From the IMG/VR virus record IMGVR_UViG_3300034073_003542, positions 145,848 to 209,847 of that record: a stretch of DNA of 64,000 nt; one strand, given 5' to 3'. The notes beneath the pieces are model-generated. The model saw nothing but the letters and a program-made list of their open reading frames with translations. It did no database searches and was not told the origin of the DNA. This document shows, in pieces, positions 29,937 through 60,151 of this stretch. Position numbers and translations under genes: made by a program. The first letter of the stretch is position 1. Every line of letters starts with the position of its first letter.

Positions 29937-30008
29937 AGACCGCAGTTGGAATCGAACCAACAAATGCTGTTTTGCAGACAGCCACCAACGCCAATTGATT
30001 TTGCGGCC
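29937..30008 (-). tRNA. tRNA-Cys(GCA)
   Basis: GGCCGCA/TGCGGTC acceptor, U discriminator, loop CTGCAAA, TTCGA T loop. Confidence 0.9.
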
Positions 30009-43860: not shown

Positions 43861-44138
43861 CAGACACTTCTCCTTTATTGTGTTGTTCTTGTCTTGCCTA
43901 TGGATGGTATTGTACTATAGGTGTAGCATTTGTCAACTAAGGTCTTTTCTTTCCCACAAAATAACTTCTTTTGAATCTCCGACAAAAAAGATAAACATAG
44001 GTATCAATAAAAGAGGACCGAGAACAAGACCACAAAGAAGCCCAATTATAATACCCTGTATTGTTATTTTACTTTGCATCTGTGTCTGAAAAAGTACAAG
44101 CAAAATAAAACCAATAGTATACCAAATTAAAAACGGTA

Positions 44139-44417
44139 TCATTCTTGTTCGACCTTTCTGGTTAGGCACGGACAATCTGGATGGTGAGTTAAAGATTCTC
44201 TATAAGCTATCCATTTATGGTTTTCATAATTTATTACCTTGATAGTATATCCGTGAACATATTGCTCGTTTTCAACTTGTGTAGGATTAGATTGTTTGGC
44301 TTTAACCCCTTCCCGTGCTTGATTAATAGCTGGAATCAATAGAGCGGCTAATGTTCCAATAATCGCTATAACTACTAAGAGTTCGACAAGAGTAAAAGCT
44401 TTTCTCATTTTATTCAA
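44139..44417 (-). CDS. prepilin-type N-terminal methylation domain protein
   Basis: [31 protein letters not shown]; short C-terminus ending HHPDCPC. Confidence 0.85.
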
Positions 44418-44673
44418 TAGGTGTAATAACTAGATCACCAGTAATACGAACCAATTTCTTAGTCTCAGAATCCATGAAAAAGTATCCATCACTTTCTCTC
44501 TCACTCAAAACTTTACCAGTAGAAATCCATTCGTGAACCTTTTGACCTCCCGACCAAAACTCCACACGATGTTTCGCTCCATAAGCATCAAACTGAGAAC
44601 GATAAGCGTCGGTACATCCAGCTCCAACAAAAAGAATCAAGCATAGTACAAAGTATCTCATGTGTTTCTTCAT
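44410..44673 (-). CDS. putative lipoprotein
   Basis: signal peptide with GAGC lipobox. Confidence 0.6.
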
Positions 44674-55125: not shown

Positions 55126-56076
55126 CTAGAGAGCGTTCGCAAACTCCAGAGCCGAAGTAAAGGCGTCCGAATTATCGTTCGCACCTTGACCGAACCAGAG
55201 CGAGTCGATCCGGTTGTCGGCGTTGCGACCCTTGGCATAGTTCAGGTATTCATTGACACCATTATATGCCGCCCACCAAGTTCCCTTGACACCGGGGAGC
55301 GACTGACGCGGACCTTCGATCCGGGTCATAATATCAGCGATGATATTCTTGGTACGAGTCGAGATGTCCTCGATAGGAGTTTTCTCAACACCCAAAACCA
55401 CCTTGACATAAGCATCGATGTCTCTTGCACTGAAATTCTTGGACGCAAGAAAGCGATACTGTTCAGCGGTCGCTTCAAACTGGACATTGATATTATCCAT
55501 AATGTCACGTACCTTTTCCAGATTGACTTTCTGCGAACGAGTATGTCGGATGCGAATAAGCTGAGAGCCAGAATCCTTGCTATGAGCCATAGCCATAGTG
55601 TTCGCACACACAACTCGGATGGGAGTATATCCCACGCGAATAGCGGTCGTACCATTGTGACTATTGGAAAGCAGGATGAACTTGCAGACAGTATCATCGC
55701 CAACAATTTCGGAGCAATCGCGGTTCAGTTGGGCAAGAACCCAAACCTTTTCGCCGTTATGGAGCGATCCGGCGGTATGCAGATTGCACTCGCCAGCATC
55801 CAGAAACGGCTGGAACCAATCGAAAGCGTCTTTATTCTGAAGTGGCACATAACGTGGGCCGACTACAGAGAAAATACGCCCATCGCTCACGCGATAGGTA
55901 GCCTTTTCCGGCAGAGCTTCGCCGTCAACAGTCTGAATAGCCTTCAGACCAACTTCCCAATTCAATCCCGACGCATCAATAGCGTCAGCAATAGTAATCT
56001 TGTCATCGACCTTATTGCCAAGACCATGCCAAGGGGTTTCACCAGCGAACATCATCGTTTCAACAGCAGCACTCAT
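55126..56076 (-). CDS. DUF932 family (phage/plasmid-like TIGR03299) protein
   Basis: ETPWHGLG, TAGSL.NG.KVW, NSHNG, TPIRVVCANT, IRHT, GTWWAAYN motifs. Confidence 0.9.
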   Translation of the reverse strand: MSAAVETMMFAGETPWHGLGNKVDDKITIADAIDASGLNWEVGLKAIQTVDGEALPEKATYRVSDGRIFSVVGPRYVPLQNKDAFDWFQPFLDAGECNLHTAGSLHNGEKVWVLAQLNRDCSEIVGDDTVCKFILLSNSHNGTTAIRVGYTPIRVVCANTMAMAHSKDSGSQLIRIRHTRSQKVNLEKVRDIMDNINVQFEATAEQYRFLASKNFSARDIDAYVKVVLGVEKTPIEDISTRTKNIIADIMTRIEGPRQSLPGVKGTWWAAYNGVNEYLNYAKGRNADNRIDSLWFGQGANDNSDAFTSALEFANAL

Positions 56077-56117
56077 CTTCGTTTCCTCTTCTTGTGGGTT
56101 ATCGTTCCGTTTCATGG

Positions 56118-56145
56118 ATTATACCAGAGCATTCGGGGGTGTCAA
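56118..56145 (-). promoter_or_regulatory. promoter TTGACA-N16-TATAAT
   Basis: perfect hexamers with TGG extension. Confidence 0.8.
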
Positions 56146-56255
56146 GGGTCTGGTTTGCGGAAAAATAAAGTTTTCGAGTCACTACTTTTGGCATGGGAGT
56201 TGCTGGGGCGTCTGCCATTTTGGCAGGCCCGGTAGGTGATCTGCCATTTTGGCAG

Positions 56256-56950: not shown

Positions 56951-57453
56951 TTCTTTTCTCCGGGTTATCGTTTCCTGTTCACTGATTATAGCATAGGTGC
57001 AGTGGCTGTCAACAGTTTTTTCGCTGGCTATCGTCATAATTTCGAATCTGGTAGATTGAGTGGAACATAATCGTTGGAGATAGAATATTCAAAAGCTTTT
57101 ATCTGATCTAGATTATCAATACTCAGAATAAGCTTTCCAGTTTTTCTAATTTGATTTTCTTGCCACTTTACATTAGCAGTAGCATTCTTGCTCATTCTCC
57201 AACCAGGCCATTGATGATCATTATATCTATTGAGAATAACAATCAGAGAATTTACATCGCCCCTAACATGGGCGTATTGAGCGAATGGAAATCCACCAGT
57301 TTTTTGGAATTTAAAAGTACTAGCTTTTGGTCCCTGAATTGTATTGATATTGATTTTTAATCTAGCGTCATTAATATGAACACTAGAAGCAATACATATA
57401 GACGAGAAGTGTATCGAGAAGAGAATGAAGAGAGTTAAGATGGGTTTCATAAG

Positions 57454-57527
57454 TAGCTGCGGTGAGGGTCGAACTCACACTGTTCGGATTTTAAGTCCGA
57501 TTTCTCTGCCTGTTGGAATACGCAGCC
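57454..57527 (-). tRNA. tRNA-Leu(TAA), short variable loop
   Basis: TCGGA CTTAAAA TCCGA anticodon arm. Confidence 0.9.
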
Positions 57528-57531
57528 ATAA

Positions 57532-57606
57532 TACCGGGAACTGGATTTGAACCAGCACTGTTATGCTTCTAAGGCATATGTCTCCTGCCAATTGGACTAC
57601 CCCGGC
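57532..57606 (-). tRNA. tRNA-Leu(TAG), short variable loop
   Basis: TATGC CTTAGAA GCATA. Confidence 0.9.
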
Positions 57607-57614
57607 GTGTCAAG

Positions 57615-57688
57615 TAGGAAGTATTGGAGTCGAACCAATCTTTTGAGTACCTTATAAGAGTACGTGCCACTACCGGCGGCAACTTCCC
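57615..57688 (-). tRNA. tRNA-Ile(TAT)
   Basis: GTACT CTTATAA GGTAC. Confidence 0.85.
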
Positions 57689-57727
57689 ATGTTTTTTATT
57701 ATACACCGACGCTGGAGAAAAGTCAAG

Positions 57728-57800
57728 TAGACCGGGTGAGAGTCGAACTCACGATAGGCGGATTAAAAGTCCGCTACTTTAGCCGCTAAGTTACCGATCC
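57728..57800 (-). tRNA. tRNA-Lys(TTT)
   Basis: GCGGA CTTTTAA TCCGC. Confidence 0.92.
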
Positions 57801-57908
57801 ATGTTCAGTCAAGTATACCATACCCTTCTCTGTTGTCAACCCCTCAATTTTGTGTCTGCCATTTTGGCAGCCTCGCTACTCCGCCTGTCAAATTGGCAGT
57901 GTCTGAAG

Positions 57909-57979
57909 TGAGTGATGAAAGAATCGAACTTTCGTCGAGATGTTAAGAGCATCCTATAATACCATTATACTAATCACCC
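57909..57979 (-). tRNA. tRNA-Lys(CTT)
   Basis: GGATG CTCTTAA CATCT. Confidence 0.9.
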
Positions 57980-57983
57980 GAAA

Positions 57984-58068
57984 TGCAGAGTTGGGGAGTC
58001 GAACCCTATCCTTCCGTCCAGTTCATTAAGGAACGAGCTTAGAACGCACGTACTGGCTGCAACCCTGC
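57984..58068 (-). tRNA. non-canonical D-armless tRNA-Arg(TCT)
   Basis: GCAGGGT/ACTCTGC acceptor, ACGTGC GTTCTAA GCTCGT anticodon arm, TTCGACT T loop; own promoter at 58079-58106. Confidence 0.65.
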
Positions 58069-58107
58069 GTGTCGATACATTATACATTACCGAATCGAAC
58101 TGTCAAG

Positions 58108-58197
58108 CGAAGGACAAGAGGATTGAACTCTCACCGGGTTTTTAATCCGGCCTACTTTTCCAAAGTAGTGCAGCAAACCAATATCTGCCTATCCTTC
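58108..58197 (-). tRNA. tRNA-Ser(GGA)
   Basis: CTACT TTGGAAA AGTAG; long variable arm. Confidence 0.9.
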
Positions 58198-58212
58198 ATA
58201 GAACCAAACAAG

Positions 58213-58298
58213 CGGAGGCGAAAGGAATCGAACCTTCGAGGGTTTTTTAGGCCCCAGCTATTTTCAAGATAGTGTCCTCGACCTACCGGACCACCTCC
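58213..58298 (-). tRNA. tRNA-Ser(TGA)
   Basis: CTAT CTTGAAA ATAG; long variable arm. Confidence 0.9.
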
Positions 58299-58311
58299 AT
58301 ATATTATCAAG

Positions 58312-58396
58312 CGGAAGTAGCAGGGTTCGAACCTGCAAGCCTTTTTAGGGGCCAACTCTTTAGCAAAGAGCTTCCTCACCAACTCGGATTACTTCC
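58312..58396 (-). tRNA. tRNA-Ser(GCT)
   Basis: GCTCT TTGCTAA AGAGT; long variable arm. Confidence 0.9.
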
Positions 58397-58401
58397 ATTA
58401 G

Positions 58402-58483
58402 CACTAGAAGTAGGACTCGAACCTACAGTGTCTTTCGACGGGAGATTAACAGTCTCCTGCGTTTACCATTCCGCCACTCTAGT
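58402..58483 (-). tRNA. tRNA-Asn(GTT) with long variable arm
   Basis: GGAGA CTGTTAA TCTCC; extra GTC GAAA GAC arm. Confidence 0.85.
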
Positions 58484-58497
58484 ATGATTATCGTCAG

Positions 58498-58570
58498 GGT
58501 GGCTAATGGGAGTCGAACCCATATCACTTGATTCACAGTCAAGCCGCTTCACCAGTTAGCGTATAACCAC
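58498..58570 (-). tRNA. tRNA-His(GTG)
   Basis: CTTGA CTGTGAA TCAAG; C discriminator. Confidence 0.9.
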
Positions 58571-58572
58571 AG

Positions 58573-58643
58573 TTCCGGGGCTACGATTCGAACGTAGAAT
58601 AAATGGTCCAAAGCCATTTGTGATACCATTTCACTACCCCGGA
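58573..58643 (-). tRNA. tRNA-Gln(TTG)
   Basis: AATGG CTTTGGA CCATT. Confidence 0.9.
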
Positions 58644-58898
58644 ATGTTAAGCGTCTCTATGCGATCCGCTTAGTTTTTTACTTTCTCTCAAATACTCAGC
58701 AATCTCTATGAGCTTCTTTCCAAGTTCTTCAATGTTGTCTGCTTCTTTTTTAGTAAGCCACGAAGCAACGTGCATGAAAAGATAATTCTCTTTACCTTTG
58801 GTTCTCACTCCAGCAACCCCGACAGACGGGTTATTAAACTCTTGTGGAAAGTTTCTCATCATGCACCTAGTTTAGCATAACTTCAAGAAGTTGTCAAG

Positions 58899-58971
58899 TG
58901 GAGCAAGTCAGAGTCGAACTGACATGGCGAGATTTTCAGTCTCGTGCCGTGACCGCGTAGGCTATTGCTCC
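58899..58971 (-). tRNA. tRNA-Phe(GAA)
   Basis: CGAGA CTGAAAA TCTCG. Confidence 0.9.
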
Positions 58972-58982
58972 ATAATTATCAG

Positions 58983-59056
58983 TCCTCAATGTAGGCATCG
59001 AACCCACTACCTTCTCGGTGTAAACGAGACGCTCTAGCCGAATGAGCTAATTGAGG
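58983..59056 (-). tRNA. tRNA-Val(TAC)
   Basis: TCTCG TTTACAC CGAGA. Confidence 0.9.
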
Positions 59057-59061
59057 ATATA

Positions 59062-59133
59062 TCTAGAATGTCGAAATCGAATCGCTCTTGCTTGCCCCAA
59101 ACAAGCCGTGCAAACCATTACACTTCATTCTAG
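59062..59133 (-). tRNA. tRNA-Pro(TGG)
   Basis: GCTTG TTTGGGG CAAGC; weak T stem. Confidence 0.8.
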
Positions 59134-59153
59134 TTATTTAACAGTCTTGAACA

Positions 59154-59225
59154 AGTTGATGATAGGAGTTGAACCTACAACTAACTTCATACCAAGAAGC
59201 TACTCTACCATTGAGTTACATCAAC
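59154..59225 (-). tRNA. tRNA-Thr(GGT)
   Basis: GCTTC TTGGTAT GAAGT. Confidence 0.9.
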
Positions 59226-59228
59226 ATA

Positions 59229-59299
59229 AGCCAATACGAGGAATCGAACCCCGGTGTTCTCATTACAAGTGAGACGTAATTCCACTATACGATACTGGC
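59229..59299 (-). tRNA. tRNA-Thr(TGT)
   Basis: TCTCA CTTGTAA TGAGA. Confidence 0.9.
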
Positions 59300-59305
59300 A
59301 AATTA

Positions 59306-59379
59306 TGCGTCTATCCAGATTCGAACTGGAACATTCAGTTTGGAAGACTGACAGGCTAGCCGTTGAACCTCATAGACGC
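59306..59379 (-). tRNA. tRNA-Gly(TCC)
   Basis: TCAGT CTTCCAA ACTGA. Confidence 0.9.
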
Positions 59380-59385
59380 GTTTAG

Positions 59386-59457
59386 TGACCCTACTGAGAA
59401 TCGAACTCAGATTGCTAGATTGAAAGTCTAGATTCCTAACCATTAGAAGATAGGGCC
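59386..59457 (-). tRNA. tRNA-Glu(TTC)
   Basis: CTAGA CTTTCAA TCTAG. Confidence 0.9.
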
Positions 59458-59496
59458 ATATCATTTCATTATACCAACTCTTTTCATTCTGTCAAG

Positions 59497-59567
59497 TGGA
59501 CCGTAAGAGAATCGAACTCTTATTTGAAGCTTGCAAAGCTACCGTTCTCCCGTTGAACTAACAGCCC
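59497..59567 (-). tRNA. tRNA-Ala(TGC)
   Basis: AGC TTTGCAA GCT; G3:U70. Confidence 0.9.
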
Positions 59568-59574
59568 ATATCTA

Positions 59575-59648
59575 TCCGCTAGGAAAGAGTCGAACTTTCG
59601 TCTCGAACTTATCAGGTTCGCATTCTAAAACCGTTGAAATACTAGCGG
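59575..59648 (-). tRNA. tRNA-Ile(GAT)
   Basis: CGAAC CTGATAA GTTCG. Confidence 0.9.
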
Positions 59649-59655
59649 TCAAAAG

Positions 59656-59741
59656 TCCCCCGTAGAAGAATTGAACTACCCGGCAGCCACCTATTAATTT
59701 AATGCCCCGTGTTTTACAGACACAGAATAGGAGTACGAGGG
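59656..59741 (-). tRNA. non-canonical D-armless tRNA-Tyr(GTA)
   Basis: CCCTCGT/ACGGGGG acceptor, CTGTGT CTGTAAA ACACGG anticodon arm, TTCAATT T loop. Confidence 0.7.
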
Positions 59742-59763
59742 AAATTATCATCATACATATCAG

Positions 59764-59836
59764 CGATTCTACCGGGAATCGAACCCGGATTTCCAGATGG
59801 ACAGTCTAGCGTCGTGAACCGTTGGACCATAGAACC
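59764..59836 (-). tRNA. tRNA-Asp(GTC)
   Basis: CTAGA CTGTCCA TCTGG. Confidence 0.88.
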
Positions 59837-59842
59837 GTTAAG

Positions 59843-59914
59843 TGGGTCGTGAATGATTTGCACATTCGTCTCTGGTTTCGTAGACCAGTATACTATCTAC
59901 TATACTAACAACCC
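59843..59914 (-). tRNA. tRNA-Arg(ACG)
   Basis: CTGGT CTACGAA ACCAG. Confidence 0.88.
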
Positions 59915-59920
59915 ATATTA

Positions 59921-60003
59921 TGTCGGCGGCGGGATTTGAACCACTTTAATGCGATTTCAAGTTTATGAGACTTGCGAGGACGACCAGACTCCTCTACGCC
60001 GAA
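59921..60003 (-). tRNA. tRNA-Met(CAT), initiator-like, with T-stem insertion
   Basis: CAAGT CTCATAA ACTTG; 1:72 mismatch. Confidence 0.75.
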
Positions 60004-60004
60004 A

Positions 60005-60075
60005 TGCCTCTTGCTTGAATTGAACAAGCGTCAACTTCGTATGAAAAAGTTAGATTACCACTATCCTAAAGAGGC
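60005..60075 (-). tRNA. tRNA with CAT anticodon (elongator Met or Ile2)
   Basis: ACTTT TTCATAC GAAGT. Confidence 0.8.
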
Positions 60076-60080
60076 GAAAG

Positions 60081-60151
60081 CATACTCACAAGGATTCGAG
60101 CCTTGACCAACTGTTTTGGAGACAGTGATGCTACCGTTACACCATGAGTAT
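60081..60151 (-). tRNA. tRNA-Trp(CCA)
   Basis: ACTGT CTCCAAA ACAGT; G discriminator. Confidence 0.88.

What the first reader, a model, noticed from the sequence alone, without database searches (positions are those of the whole stretch)
44139..44417. Planctomycete-style prepilin leader fused to a short phage domain
Seen: [32 protein letters not shown], then ~55 aa ending HHPDCPC. Established: [26 protein letters not shown] is the hallmark N-terminus of the expanded DUF1559 family of Planctomycetota. Inference: a pilin mimic that may poison pilus/T2SS assembly (superinfection exclusion), and strong host evidence.
Basis: partly seen in the sequence, partly recalled or inferred. Interest (0 to 1): 0.6.

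Follow-up and report, generated by a model that had tools for sequence, protein, structure and literature searches.

The report
Phage mini-protein with planctomycete pilin leader
A 210-kb phage, very probably of Planctomycetota, encodes an 89-residue protein that joins a host-style pilin signal-anchor to a tiny His/Cys domain found almost only in phages; other phages put the same domain on lipoprotein or plain membrane anchors, so the domain rather than pilin mimicry looks like the working part.

Summary
The ORF is real: window 44142-44408 (-), 89 aa from the ATG. Its N-terminus passes Pfam N_methyl and TIGR02532. From position -1 it is 18-24/30 identical to DUF1559 N-termini of a candidate host genome.

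It is not a DUF1559 protein: it has no SBP_bac_10 domain and no H-X9-DG motif.

The C-terminal 35-45 residues form a confidently modelled three-stranded beta-meander ending in H...HHPDCPC. This unnamed family has 859 cluster representatives. The proteins are small and the domain is always C-terminal. It was absent from 401 sampled Planctomycetota genomes, and its structural neighbours are viral clusters.

By a home-made rule, only about a third of the best 149 members carry a prepilin-type leader. The rest have lipoboxes or plain membrane anchors.

My best reading is a phage accessory envelope protein. A host-adapted class III signal-anchor displays a probable metal-binding mini-domain on the periplasmic side, perhaps for superinfection exclusion. 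Pilus poisoning remains possible but is not the family's common denominator.

Host evidence is strong, but it comes mainly from a second phage gene (398 aa). That gene is 78-84% identical to a conserved chromosomal gene of one Planctomycetota family.

The parts
44142..44408 (-). CDS of the 89-aa mini-protein (stop codon at 44139-44141). The longest ORF from the TTG at 44417 is probably not the start that is used.
   Evidence: The homologues begin at the equivalent Met.
44292..44408 (-). Class III (prepilin-type) signal-anchor. Residues 1-4 are a short basic leader ending in Ala(-1). Then come Phe(+1), Glu(+5) and a hydrophobic helix to about residue 39, including the DUF1559-style extension [11 protein letters not shown].
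   Evidence: PF07963 at 31.2 bits and TIGR02532 at 28.2 bits. The AF2 helix spans residues 7-39 with pLDDT above 90. It is 18-24/30 identical to host DUF1559 N-termini.
44244..44291 (-). Low-complexity linker (residues 40-55), variable in length and predicted to be disordered.
   Evidence: pLDDT is about 51 and no secondary structure is predicted. These alignment columns are gappy.
44142..44243 (-). C-terminal mini-domain (residues 56-89): a three-stranded beta-meander plus a knuckle and a short charged tail. It belongs to an unnamed family that is largely confined to phages.
   Evidence: The domain-only AF2 model has pLDDT 85.6, with the core above 90. The profile search finds 859 representatives. 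There is no Pfam, NCBIfam, PHROG or PDB match.
44166..44186 (-). HHPDCPC motif (residues 75-81). Together with the invariant His64 (window 44217-44219) it forms a probable metal-binding cluster.
   Evidence: H20, H31, H32, P33, C35 and C37 are invariant across 125 domain sequences. The motif is present in 130 of 149 representatives, and the variants keep the H..C.C pattern.
44410..44673 (-). Upstream 87-aa probable lipoprotein (signal peptide ending ...VGAGC). Its stop codon lies 1 nt before the ATG of the mini-protein. The gene is not conserved next to family members elsewhere.
   Evidence: It matches no family. It is not conserved in relatives.
43933..44142 (-). Downstream small protein with two hydrophobic segments (about 69 aa from the ATG at 44142). 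Its start overlaps the mini-protein's stop as ATGA. It is not conserved with the family.
   Evidence: It matches no family. It is not conserved in relatives.

Best explanation
This is a stand-alone phage accessory gene, probably expressed early, whose product is sent to the cell envelope of a Planctomycetota host. The N-terminal 35-39 residues copy the class III (prepilin-type) signal-anchor that this host puts on dozens of its own DUF1559 proteins. That anchor inserts the protein in the cytoplasmic membrane with the C-terminus on the periplasmic side. It is probably trimmed by the host prepilin peptidase, since the phage encodes none. A flexible linker then displays a 35-residue beta-meander carrying one invariant His plus HHPDCPC, most simply read as a Zn (or Cu) binding knuckle. 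That mini-domain is the working part. Other phages deliver the same domain to the same compartment with lipoprotein signals or plain membrane anchors. The most likely job is to bind and modify or mask an envelope component of the infected cell, which would be superinfection exclusion or a related takeover function. Shown here: the architecture, the leader's similarity to the host's, the family's distribution, the interchangeable anchors and the host link. Inferred: topology, processing, metal binding and the exclusion function.
For: The leader passes the N_methyl and TIGR02532 thresholds and is on average 70% identical to host DUF1559 N-termini. The phage has no Peptidase_A24, whereas 4 of the 5 closest candidate host genomes do, along with 25-30 PF07596 matches each. 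The C-domain is the conserved unit. It has 859 representatives, all small, with the domain always C-terminal. His and Cys positions are invariant. By a home-made rule, the anchors of the best 149 are class III in 39, degenerate class III in 13, lipobox in 39 and TM/SP in 52. Anchor type is interspersed on the domain tree, with 40 changes over 125 tips. Models are confident: pLDDT 80.6 for the whole protein and 85.6 for the domain. Distribution is viral: at least 25 IMG/VR contigs, ESM Atlas neighbours that are 71-100% Viruses, 0 of 401 Planctomycetota genomes with a 5/5 positive control, and one hit in the host family that sits on a 1.4-kb contig beside a terminase-like ORF. The context in this phage and in relatives is arrays of tiny co-directional ORFs with TK, ThyX, UvdE and Pyr_excise, not lysis or structural modules. 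Kin phages attach N_methyl leaders to other cargos: true DUF1559, a 398-aa H-X9-DG-type protein and a 283-aa protein with a weak DUF4886 hit. This fits the leader acting as a general targeting device.
Against: There is no experimental or expression evidence; no RNA run holds the phage. Metal binding is inferred from the residue pattern only, and I could not inspect the model's coordinates. Gly/Ala(-1), Phe/Tyr(+1) and Glu(+5) are retained in most of the 18 class III members despite 25-50% overall identity. That hints at selection for more than simple anchoring, for instance engagement of the pilus machinery. The exclusion function is an analogy, not a result. Absence from bacteria was tested only in samples of one phylum and with one narrow pattern over GTDB.
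Confidence: 0.5

Rival explanations
1. This is a true pilin mimic. After cleavage by the host prepilin peptidase, the alpha-1 helix with Glu(+5) enters the host type IV pilus, T2SS-like or DUF1559 fibre machinery. There the protein either caps or poisons assembly, or is built into the fibre and masks a phage receptor. The result would be superinfection exclusion.
For: The class III signal is canonical and Glu(+5) is conserved in most class III members. The best NCBIfam hit, though below its cut-off, is the short pilin ComGC across residues 6-77. There is a precedent: prophage FimU-like minor pilins are incorporated into the pilus and block tip-binding phages. In addition, truncated 60-residue PilA-like proteins occur in six virulent Pseudomonas phages, with function untested (PMC12952977). 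The candidate host genomes encode the peptidase.
Against: About two thirds of family members lack a pilin-type N-terminus yet keep the C-domain. Some members have decayed cleavage sites. The model shows a disordered linker and a mini-domain that does not pack on the helix, so there is no pilin head. PDB matches are weak (Foldseek E>=2.3, XcpGHIJK TMq 0.42, from the helix alone). Beyond the leader there is no similarity to any host pilus subunit.
Confidence: 0.25
2. The protein is a lysis-related envelope factor, spanin-like or antiholin-like. It would act with the translationally coupled upstream lipoprotein and the downstream small membrane protein with two hydrophobic segments.
For: Three tightly coupled genes all encode envelope-targeted small proteins: a 1-nt spacer on one side and an ATGA overlap on the other. 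In a subset of high-GC phages, lipoprotein-anchored members sit directly downstream of a secreted protein of about 100 aa.
Against: The two neighbours are not conserved next to family members in related phages. The periplasmic part is a beta mini-domain, not the coiled coil typical of i-spanins. No endolysin lies nearby; the surroundings are small ORFs of unknown function and nucleotide-metabolism genes. The same domain occurs on both inner-membrane-type and lipoprotein anchors, which does not fit a two-component spanin.
Confidence: 0.08
3. The protein is a periplasmic metal-handling or thiol-redox factor. The CPC motif would act as a redox or Cu/Zn-transfer site that serves phage or host envelope proteins during infection.
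For: One His plus HH..C.C is invariant. The domain is always exported or anchored outside the cytoplasm. The phage also encodes an exported thioredoxin-like protein and a trypsin-like protease near its other pilin-like gene.
Against: No sequence or fold similarity to any known metallochaperone or oxidoreductase was found. A 35-residue domain is more typical of a structural metal knuckle.
Confidence: 0.07

Closest known systems
DUF1559 / SBP_bac_10 proteins of Planctomycetota (N_methyl + PF07596 + H-X9-DG). There are at least 41 genes per Planctomycetales genome (PMC8567305) and 68 paralogues in Planctopirus limnophila (PMC10632474).
   Same: The N-terminal 30-35 residues are shared: a basic leader, (G/A)[14 protein letters not shown], then LL.PA..xARE. 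The mini-protein is 18-24/30 identical to 12 such N-termini in the candidate host genome.
   Different: It has no SBP_bac_10 domain and no H-X9-DG motif. It is 89 aa rather than 300-400 aa. Its C-terminal domain is unrelated and phage-specific.
Prophage-encoded FimU-like minor pilins (P-FimU) and the truncated PilA-like proteins of virulent Pseudomonas phages (Sztanko et al., Cell Rep 2026, PMC12952977).
   Same: All are phage-encoded proteins with a type IV pilin N-terminus. The short ones have about 60 residues and come from virulent phages. The proposed role is exclusion of competing phages.
   Different: P-FimU resembles a host pilus subunit along its whole length and is shown to be incorporated into the pilus. 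Here only the leader is host-like, and the C-terminal domain also occurs on non-pilin anchors. In this phage the better counterpart of P-FimU is the separate 398-aa gene, which is 78-84% identical to a host chromosomal gene.
Small envelope-targeted exclusion proteins of phages, such as T5 Llp and phi80/N15 Cor lipoproteins and T4 Imm and Sp (from my own knowledge, not tested here).
   Same: They are small, anchored or exported to the envelope, encoded as stand-alone accessory genes, and act on envelope targets.
   Different: No sequence or fold similarity was detected. The target and the effect of the HHPDCPC domain are unknown.
Short type IV pilins such as ComGC (NF040999).
   Same: The length is similar, with a class III signal plus a small C-terminal part. 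ComGC is the best NCBIfam hit at 35.8 bits over residues 6-77.
   Different: The score is far below the family cut-off of 75 bits. The His/Cys domain is absent from ComGC.

Membership tests
Type IV pilin-like proteins (class III signal peptide; PF07963 / TIGR02532) | The profile match exceeds the curated threshold. | tested here: met
   PF07963 scores 31.2 bits against 21.2, and TIGR02532 scores 28.2 against 16.3.
Type IV pilin-like proteins (class III signal peptide; PF07963 / TIGR02532) | A short basic leader with Gly (rarely Ala) at -1, a hydrophobic or aromatic residue at +1, Glu at +5, and about 20 hydrophobic residues forming alpha-1N. | tested here: met
   The sequence reads M-R-K-A | F-T-L-V-E followed by a hydrophobic helix, and AF2 models a helix over residues 7-39. 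Ala at -1 also occurs in 5 of 13 host leaders examined.
Type IV pilin-like proteins (class III signal peptide; PF07963 / TIGR02532) | Cleavage and N-methylation by a prepilin peptidase. | not testable with these tools
   The phage has no Peptidase_A24, while 4 of the 5 closest candidate host genomes have one. Processing is therefore feasible but not shown.
Type IV pilin-like proteins (class III signal peptide; PF07963 / TIGR02532) | A globular alpha/beta head packed on alpha-1C (the pilin fold). | tested here: not met
   The model has a disordered linker (residues 40-55) followed by a 3-stranded mini-domain. Foldseek finds no PDB match at E<=0.001.
DUF1559 (PF07596 SBP_bac_10 with H-X9-DG, TIGR04294) | An SBP_bac_10 domain following the leader. 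| tested here: not met
   The protein has no PF07596 hit at E<=1, and the whole phage has none either. The same model scores 84-164 bits on DUF1559 genes of kin viral contigs and finds 25-30 matches per host genome.
DUF1559 (PF07596 SBP_bac_10 with H-X9-DG, TIGR04294) | A C-terminal H-X9-DG motif. | tested here: not met
   The mini-protein has no TIGR04294 hit.
DUF1559 (PF07596 SBP_bac_10 with H-X9-DG, TIGR04294) | The characteristic N-terminus (G/A)[24 protein letters not shown]. | tested here: met
   It is 18-24/30 identical to 12 host DUF1559 N-termini. About 85% of leader-only database hits carry PF07596.
Unnamed 'HHPDCPC' phage mini-domain family (defined here) | A C-terminal beta-meander of about 35 aa with one invariant His, then H-H-P-x-C-x-C, and a short tail. 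| tested here: met
   The profile matches the window's gene at E 2.2e-14. The invariant columns are listed.
Unnamed 'HHPDCPC' phage mini-domain family (defined here) | A small protein (median 87 aa) with an N-terminal envelope anchor or signal, encoded on viral DNA. | tested here: met
   Searches give size and anchors. Searches give the viral contigs. One search gives the Atlas taxa. Searches show 0 of 401 Planctomycetota genomes against 5 of 5 viral controls.
Phage pilin replacements of the P-FimU type | Resemblance to a host pilus subunit along the whole length. | tested here: not met
   Host-like similarity ends at about residue 35, and all full-length relatives are viral or metagenomic small proteins.
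Two-component spanins | An i-spanin with an N-terminal TM segment and a coiled-coil periplasmic domain, paired with an o-spanin lipoprotein in a lysis cassette. | tested here: not met
   The periplasmic part is a beta domain. The lipoprotein neighbour is not conserved with the family. No lysis genes are adjacent.

The most novel reading that the evidence does not exclude
The HHPDCPC mini-domain would be a previously unrecognised periplasmic effector module that is essentially exclusive to phages, with more than 850 sequence clusters. Phages would re-address it to the envelope of very different hosts by swapping the N-terminal anchor. In phages of Planctomycetota the anchor has been taken from the host's huge DUF1559/pilin-like family. 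The effector could then ride on, or block, the still enigmatic DUF1559 or pilus fibres of these bacteria. Together with the phage's host-derived 398-aa pilin-like gene, this would be a phage tool-kit for remodelling planctomycete surface fibres. It would also be the first genomic handle on jumbo phages of this phylum.
Probability: 0.3. Interest if true: 0.75.

Novelty: new variant of a known kind. Interest (0 to 1): 0.6.

Why it matters
1. It defines a large, unannotated phage protein family. The family has a very simple, testable architecture: an anchor plus a 35-residue His/Cys domain. The anchor swapping suggests that the periplasmic location is what matters.

2. It links a 210-kb, tRNA-rich, 35% GC phage to one family of Planctomycetota whose chromosomes are about 65% GC. 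Related low-GC viral contigs share genes with this phage and carry true DUF1559 genes. The paper library searched holds essentially nothing on phages of this phylum.

3. It shows that these phages carry several proteins with the host's class III leader: the mini-domain, DUF1559, an H-X9-DG-type protein and a protein with a weak DUF4886 hit. This gives a natural entry point for studying what the expanded DUF1559/pilin-like system of Planctomycetota does. It also allows a test of whether phages use or block that system.

Tried and rejected
- **Family scans of the C-domain.** Pfam, NCBIfam and PHROGs gave nothing; all hits were to the leader only.
- **Structure and sequence searches.** The PDB sequence profile had a best E of 0.055. 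Foldseek against the PDB found nothing at E<=0.001. VIA-align wide had a best Z of 2.4. The ESM Atlas returned only unnamed viral clusters.
- **Conserved gene neighbourhood.** The window's lipoprotein and the small membrane-protein neighbour are not conserved with the family. A secreted protein of about 100 aa ('cluster 7') sits beside the lipoprotein-type members in some high-GC phages. It matches no family and is absent from this phage.
- **GenBank phage records (INPHARED).** There was no match for the mini-protein, for a lipoprotein-anchored member or for the 398-aa protein. A domain query at E<=10 gave only chance-level rows.
- **GTDB-wide scan.** The tool chose the narrow pattern HHPDCPCxxR and returned three weak matches, at least two with no ORF start. 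It does not show absence from bacteria.
- **Tool limits.** I reached host genomes through locus L070 instead.
- **Phage hallmark genes.** Eight of the ten large ORFs scanned had no PHROG hit. The others matched a DNA polymerase family (phrog_405) and a glycosyltransferase family, and Terminase_6N gave only a weak hit at 16 bits. The structural genes were not identified. The 'virus record, 100% complete' label is IMG/VR's and CheckV's.
- **Expression.** No RNA run holds the phage.
- **Genetic code.** Only table 11 was used.

Full report
**1. The observation**

The ORF exists at window 44139..44417 on the minus strand, 92 aa from a TTG. Homologues start at the equivalent of the ATG at 44408. The upstream gene's TAA stop lies 1 nt before that ATG. 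The product is therefore 89 aa, encoded at 44142-44408.

The N-terminus passes curated thresholds. Pfam N_methyl scores 31.2 bits against a cut-off of 21.2, and TIGR02532 scores 28.2 against 16.3.

One detail of the finding needs correcting. HHPDCPC is at residues 75-81 (window 44166-44186) and is followed by 8 more residues, so it is not the end of the protein.

**2. The genome**

The window is bases 145848-209847 of a 209,847-bp IMG/VR virus record that CheckV rates 100% complete.
- GC is 0.35.
- The window holds 25 tRNA genes, 24 of them in one array at 57.4-60.2 kb.
- A phage-type DNA polymerase (phrog_405) is present.
- Most large ORFs match nothing in Pfam or PHROGs, so this is a poorly known phage lineage.
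- The phage DNA occurs in four runs of one subsurface/soil study. No RNA run holds it.

**3. The leader**

A word search with the 89-aa protein gave two kinds of hit.
- Six were full-length relatives of 78-99 aa at 38-49% identity.
- Hundreds were leader-only matches at 68-89% identity over the first 30-45% of the query. About 85% of the listed ones carry PF07596 (DUF1559). Every source name but one is Planctomycetota, including Pirellulaceae and Planctomycetaceae.

I then fetched 12 DUF1559 genes from a candidate host genome (G001, see section 6). Counted from position -1, the phage leader is 18-24/30 identical to them. Three share an identical 17-residue core.

The literature agrees that N_methyl plus SBP_bac_10 is a heavily expanded family of Planctomycetales (PMC8567305; PMC10632474).

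The protein is nevertheless not a DUF1559 member. It has no PF07596 hit and no H-X9-DG hit.

**4. The C-terminal domain**

The six full-length relatives and the window protein share H..W...HHPDCPC..R..E.

Scanning IMG/VR found 52 loci.
- At least 25 encode full-length relatives, on contigs with GC from 0.33 to 0.63. These include jumbo records of 323 kb and 251 kb.
- Other loci carry the same C-terminal module behind lipoprotein signals (...LASGC) or plain signal or membrane anchors.

A profile of the domain alone, searched against 1.84 billion representatives, found 859 proteins at E<=1e-3 and 56 at E<=1e-10. The listed 150 are 52-185 aa long (median 87), with the domain C-terminal.

By a home-made rule, the best 149 split as follows:

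| Anchor type | Number |
|---|---|
| Class III leader | 39 |
| Degenerate class III-like | 13 |
| Lipobox | 39 |
| Plain TM or signal peptide | 52 |
| Unclear | 6 |

On a weak FastTree of the 45-column domain alignment, anchor type changes at least 40 times over 125 tips. The first ten of 200 label shuffles gave 52-62 changes. Anchors are therefore interspersed, with only modest clustering.

Invariant positions are one His, then H-H-P, C and C. This invariance is partly seeded by the search pattern. However, it also holds in the profile hits, where 130 of 149 have the exact motif and the variants keep H..C.C.

AlphaFold2 models show the following.
- Whole protein (pLDDT 80.6): a helix over residues 7-39, a disordered linker over 40-55, three short strands, and the knuckle.
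- Domain alone (pLDDT 85.6): the core is above 90.

No known fold or family matches. The nearest ESM Atlas clusters are unnamed 63-91-aa proteins that are 71-100% viral, and one of them has a lipoprotein motif.

**5. Is the domain phage-only?**

- The domain profile hit 0 of 401 genomes sampled evenly from the phylum of G001.
- The same search hit 5 of 5 viral records at E 1e-12 to 1e-17, which serves as the positive control.
- In G001's own family there was 1 real hit in 151 genomes. It sits on a 1.4-kb contig beside a terminase-like ORF, and it is a lipoprotein-anchored variant.
- No GenBank phage record matches, so the family is so far confined to uncultured phages.
- The GTDB-wide pattern scan was too narrow to prove absence from bacteria.

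**6. The host**

The phage holds a second N_methyl ORF outside the window, at G000:C1:129580-130776 (398 aa).
- It has 2,062 relatives, the best at 70-83% identity over the full length.
- NCBI names for them include Planctomycetaceae and Planctomycetota MAGs. JGI calls them 'prepilin-type ... H-X9-DG protein'.
- Three of these relatives lie in clearly chromosomal DNA. One context is GyrB, DciA and sugar catabolism. A recurring one is ADH, a small ORF, this gene, a P-type ATPase and Band_7.
- Those loci have GC 0.64-0.68. In the two loci measured the gene's GC3 is 0.84, against 0.22 for the phage copy, and nucleotide identity is 65%. The phage copy is therefore old and compositionally adapted, yet strongly conserved.
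- In an even sample of the phylum, only G001 has a close match (81%).
- In G001's GTDB family, 65 of 151 genomes have a match, grading from 84% down to 41%.
- The five closest genomes each have 25-30 PF07596 matches, and four of them have a prepilin peptidase. The phage has none.
- Low-GC viral contigs that share 8-14 ORFs with this phage carry genuine DUF1559 genes.

I conclude that the host is very probably a member of this Planctomycetota family. The leader alone would be only moderate evidence for that.

The large GC gap has precedents among jumbo phages; phiKZ is one example from my own knowledge. It also fits the phage's near-complete tRNA set.

**7. Context and mechanism**

The gene is translationally coupled to two neighbours. 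Upstream is an 87-aa probable lipoprotein. Downstream is a small membrane protein with two hydrophobic segments. Neither neighbour accompanies family members in related phages.

In relatives the gene sits in long arrays of tiny co-directional ORFs with TK, ThyX, UvdE and Pyr_excise. That is the look of an early or accessory region, not a lysis or virion module.

The two jumbo relatives each pair a mini-protein with another N_methyl protein. In one of them I read this protein: it is 283 aa with a weak DUF4886 hit, below the cut-off.

Taken together, these phages use the host's class III leader as a general address label for several cargos. The HHPDCPC domain is one such cargo, and other phages address it differently.

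My preferred mechanism has three steps.
1. The protein inserts in the membrane, and the host peptidase probably cleaves the leader.
2. The metal-stabilised mini-domain is displayed on the periplasmic side.
3. The domain binds an envelope target, which gives exclusion of other phages or envelope takeover.

Steps after the architecture are inference.

The class III features are well kept within that subfamily. Phage pilin mimics are now a documented defence (PMC12952977). In this phage, however, the 398-aa host-like gene is the better candidate for that role.

**8. Novelty**

Phage-encoded pilin-like proteins and small envelope exclusion factors are known kinds. The HHPDCPC domain, its anchor modularity and the DUF1559-type leader on a phage protein are not described in Pfam, NCBIfam or PHROGs, and no paper in the library holds both 'DUF1559' and 'phage'. 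A phrase search for phages of Planctomycetes found only one passing mention. I rate this a new variant of a known kind, with interest 0.6.

Noticed in passing
Outside the window: G000:C1:129580-130776 (+) = L001:5581-6777: This is a second phage gene with a prepilin leader (398 aa, only N_methyl in Pfam, weak H-X9-DG). It is 78-84% identical to a conserved chromosomal gene of one Planctomycetota family. GC3 is 0.22 in the phage against 0.84 in the bacteria. It is a better candidate for a P-FimU-like host-subunit replacement than the mini-protein.
   Followed up: yes
window 57453-60151 (-) and 29937-30008 (-): The window holds an array of 24 tRNA genes plus a lone tRNA-Cys. The phage has 35% GC while its candidate host chromosomes have 64-68% GC. 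The tRNA set may offset the codon-usage gap.
   Followed up: partly
L013, L015, L018, L020, L030-L033 (IMG/VR contigs): These viral contigs encode genuine DUF1559 proteins (PF07596 at 84-164 bits). The low-GC ones share 8-14 ORFs with this phage per 20 kb or less. No paper in the library mentions DUF1559 together with phage.
   Followed up: partly
L091:202-1053 (+), from the 323-kb viral record G402; a second N_methyl hit in a 287-aa frame also lies at G403:C1:202974-203054 (fetched as L092): The L091 ORF carries an N_methyl leader (24.1 bits) fused to a 283-aa protein with a weak DUF4886 hit (22.8 bits, below the 26.7 cut-off). DUF4886 is SGNH-hydrolase-like by my own knowledge. This is another cargo on a class III leader in jumbo kin that also carry the mini-protein. 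I did not read the G403 ORF.
   Followed up: partly
L044:9624-9923, L047:4328-4717, L051:9603-9908, L075:734-994 (also L010, L037): A secreted protein of about 100 aa (...EGIGFS...CC...RGWFAV.RY) lies directly upstream of the lipoprotein-anchored HHPDCPC genes in high-GC phages. It has no Pfam or PHROG match and is absent from this phage. It may be a partner.
   Followed up: partly
L065:10001-10291 and L065:11547-11858: One 61-kb contig (GC 0.55) carries two paralogues of the mini-protein about 1.3 kb apart. P0142 (185 aa) carries two tandem copies of the domain in one protein.
   Followed up: no
window 43933-44673 (-): Three translationally coupled small envelope genes sit together: a probable lipoprotein, the mini-prepilin, and a protein with two hydrophobic segments. 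The junctions are a 1-nt spacer and an ATGA overlap. The two outer genes match no family.
   Followed up: partly
Outside the window: G000:C1:19652-34960 (+): The phage has a single ORF of 5,102 aa. Nearby are an FGE-sulfatase-domain protein (854 aa) and a mannosyltransferase-like protein.
   Followed up: no
L001:7522-8271 (-) and L001:8335-8712 (-): A trypsin-like protease and a thioredoxin-like protein, both with signal-peptide-like N-termini by eye, lie about 750 bp beyond the 3' end of the 398-aa pilin-like gene on the opposite strand. They may be further envelope-directed phage proteins.
   Followed up: no
window 55126-56235: Long ORFs overlap on both strands (329 aa on the minus strand, 349 aa on the plus strand). 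They lie in a stretch of higher GC (0.44) just before the tRNA array. I did not work out which one is real.
   Followed up: no
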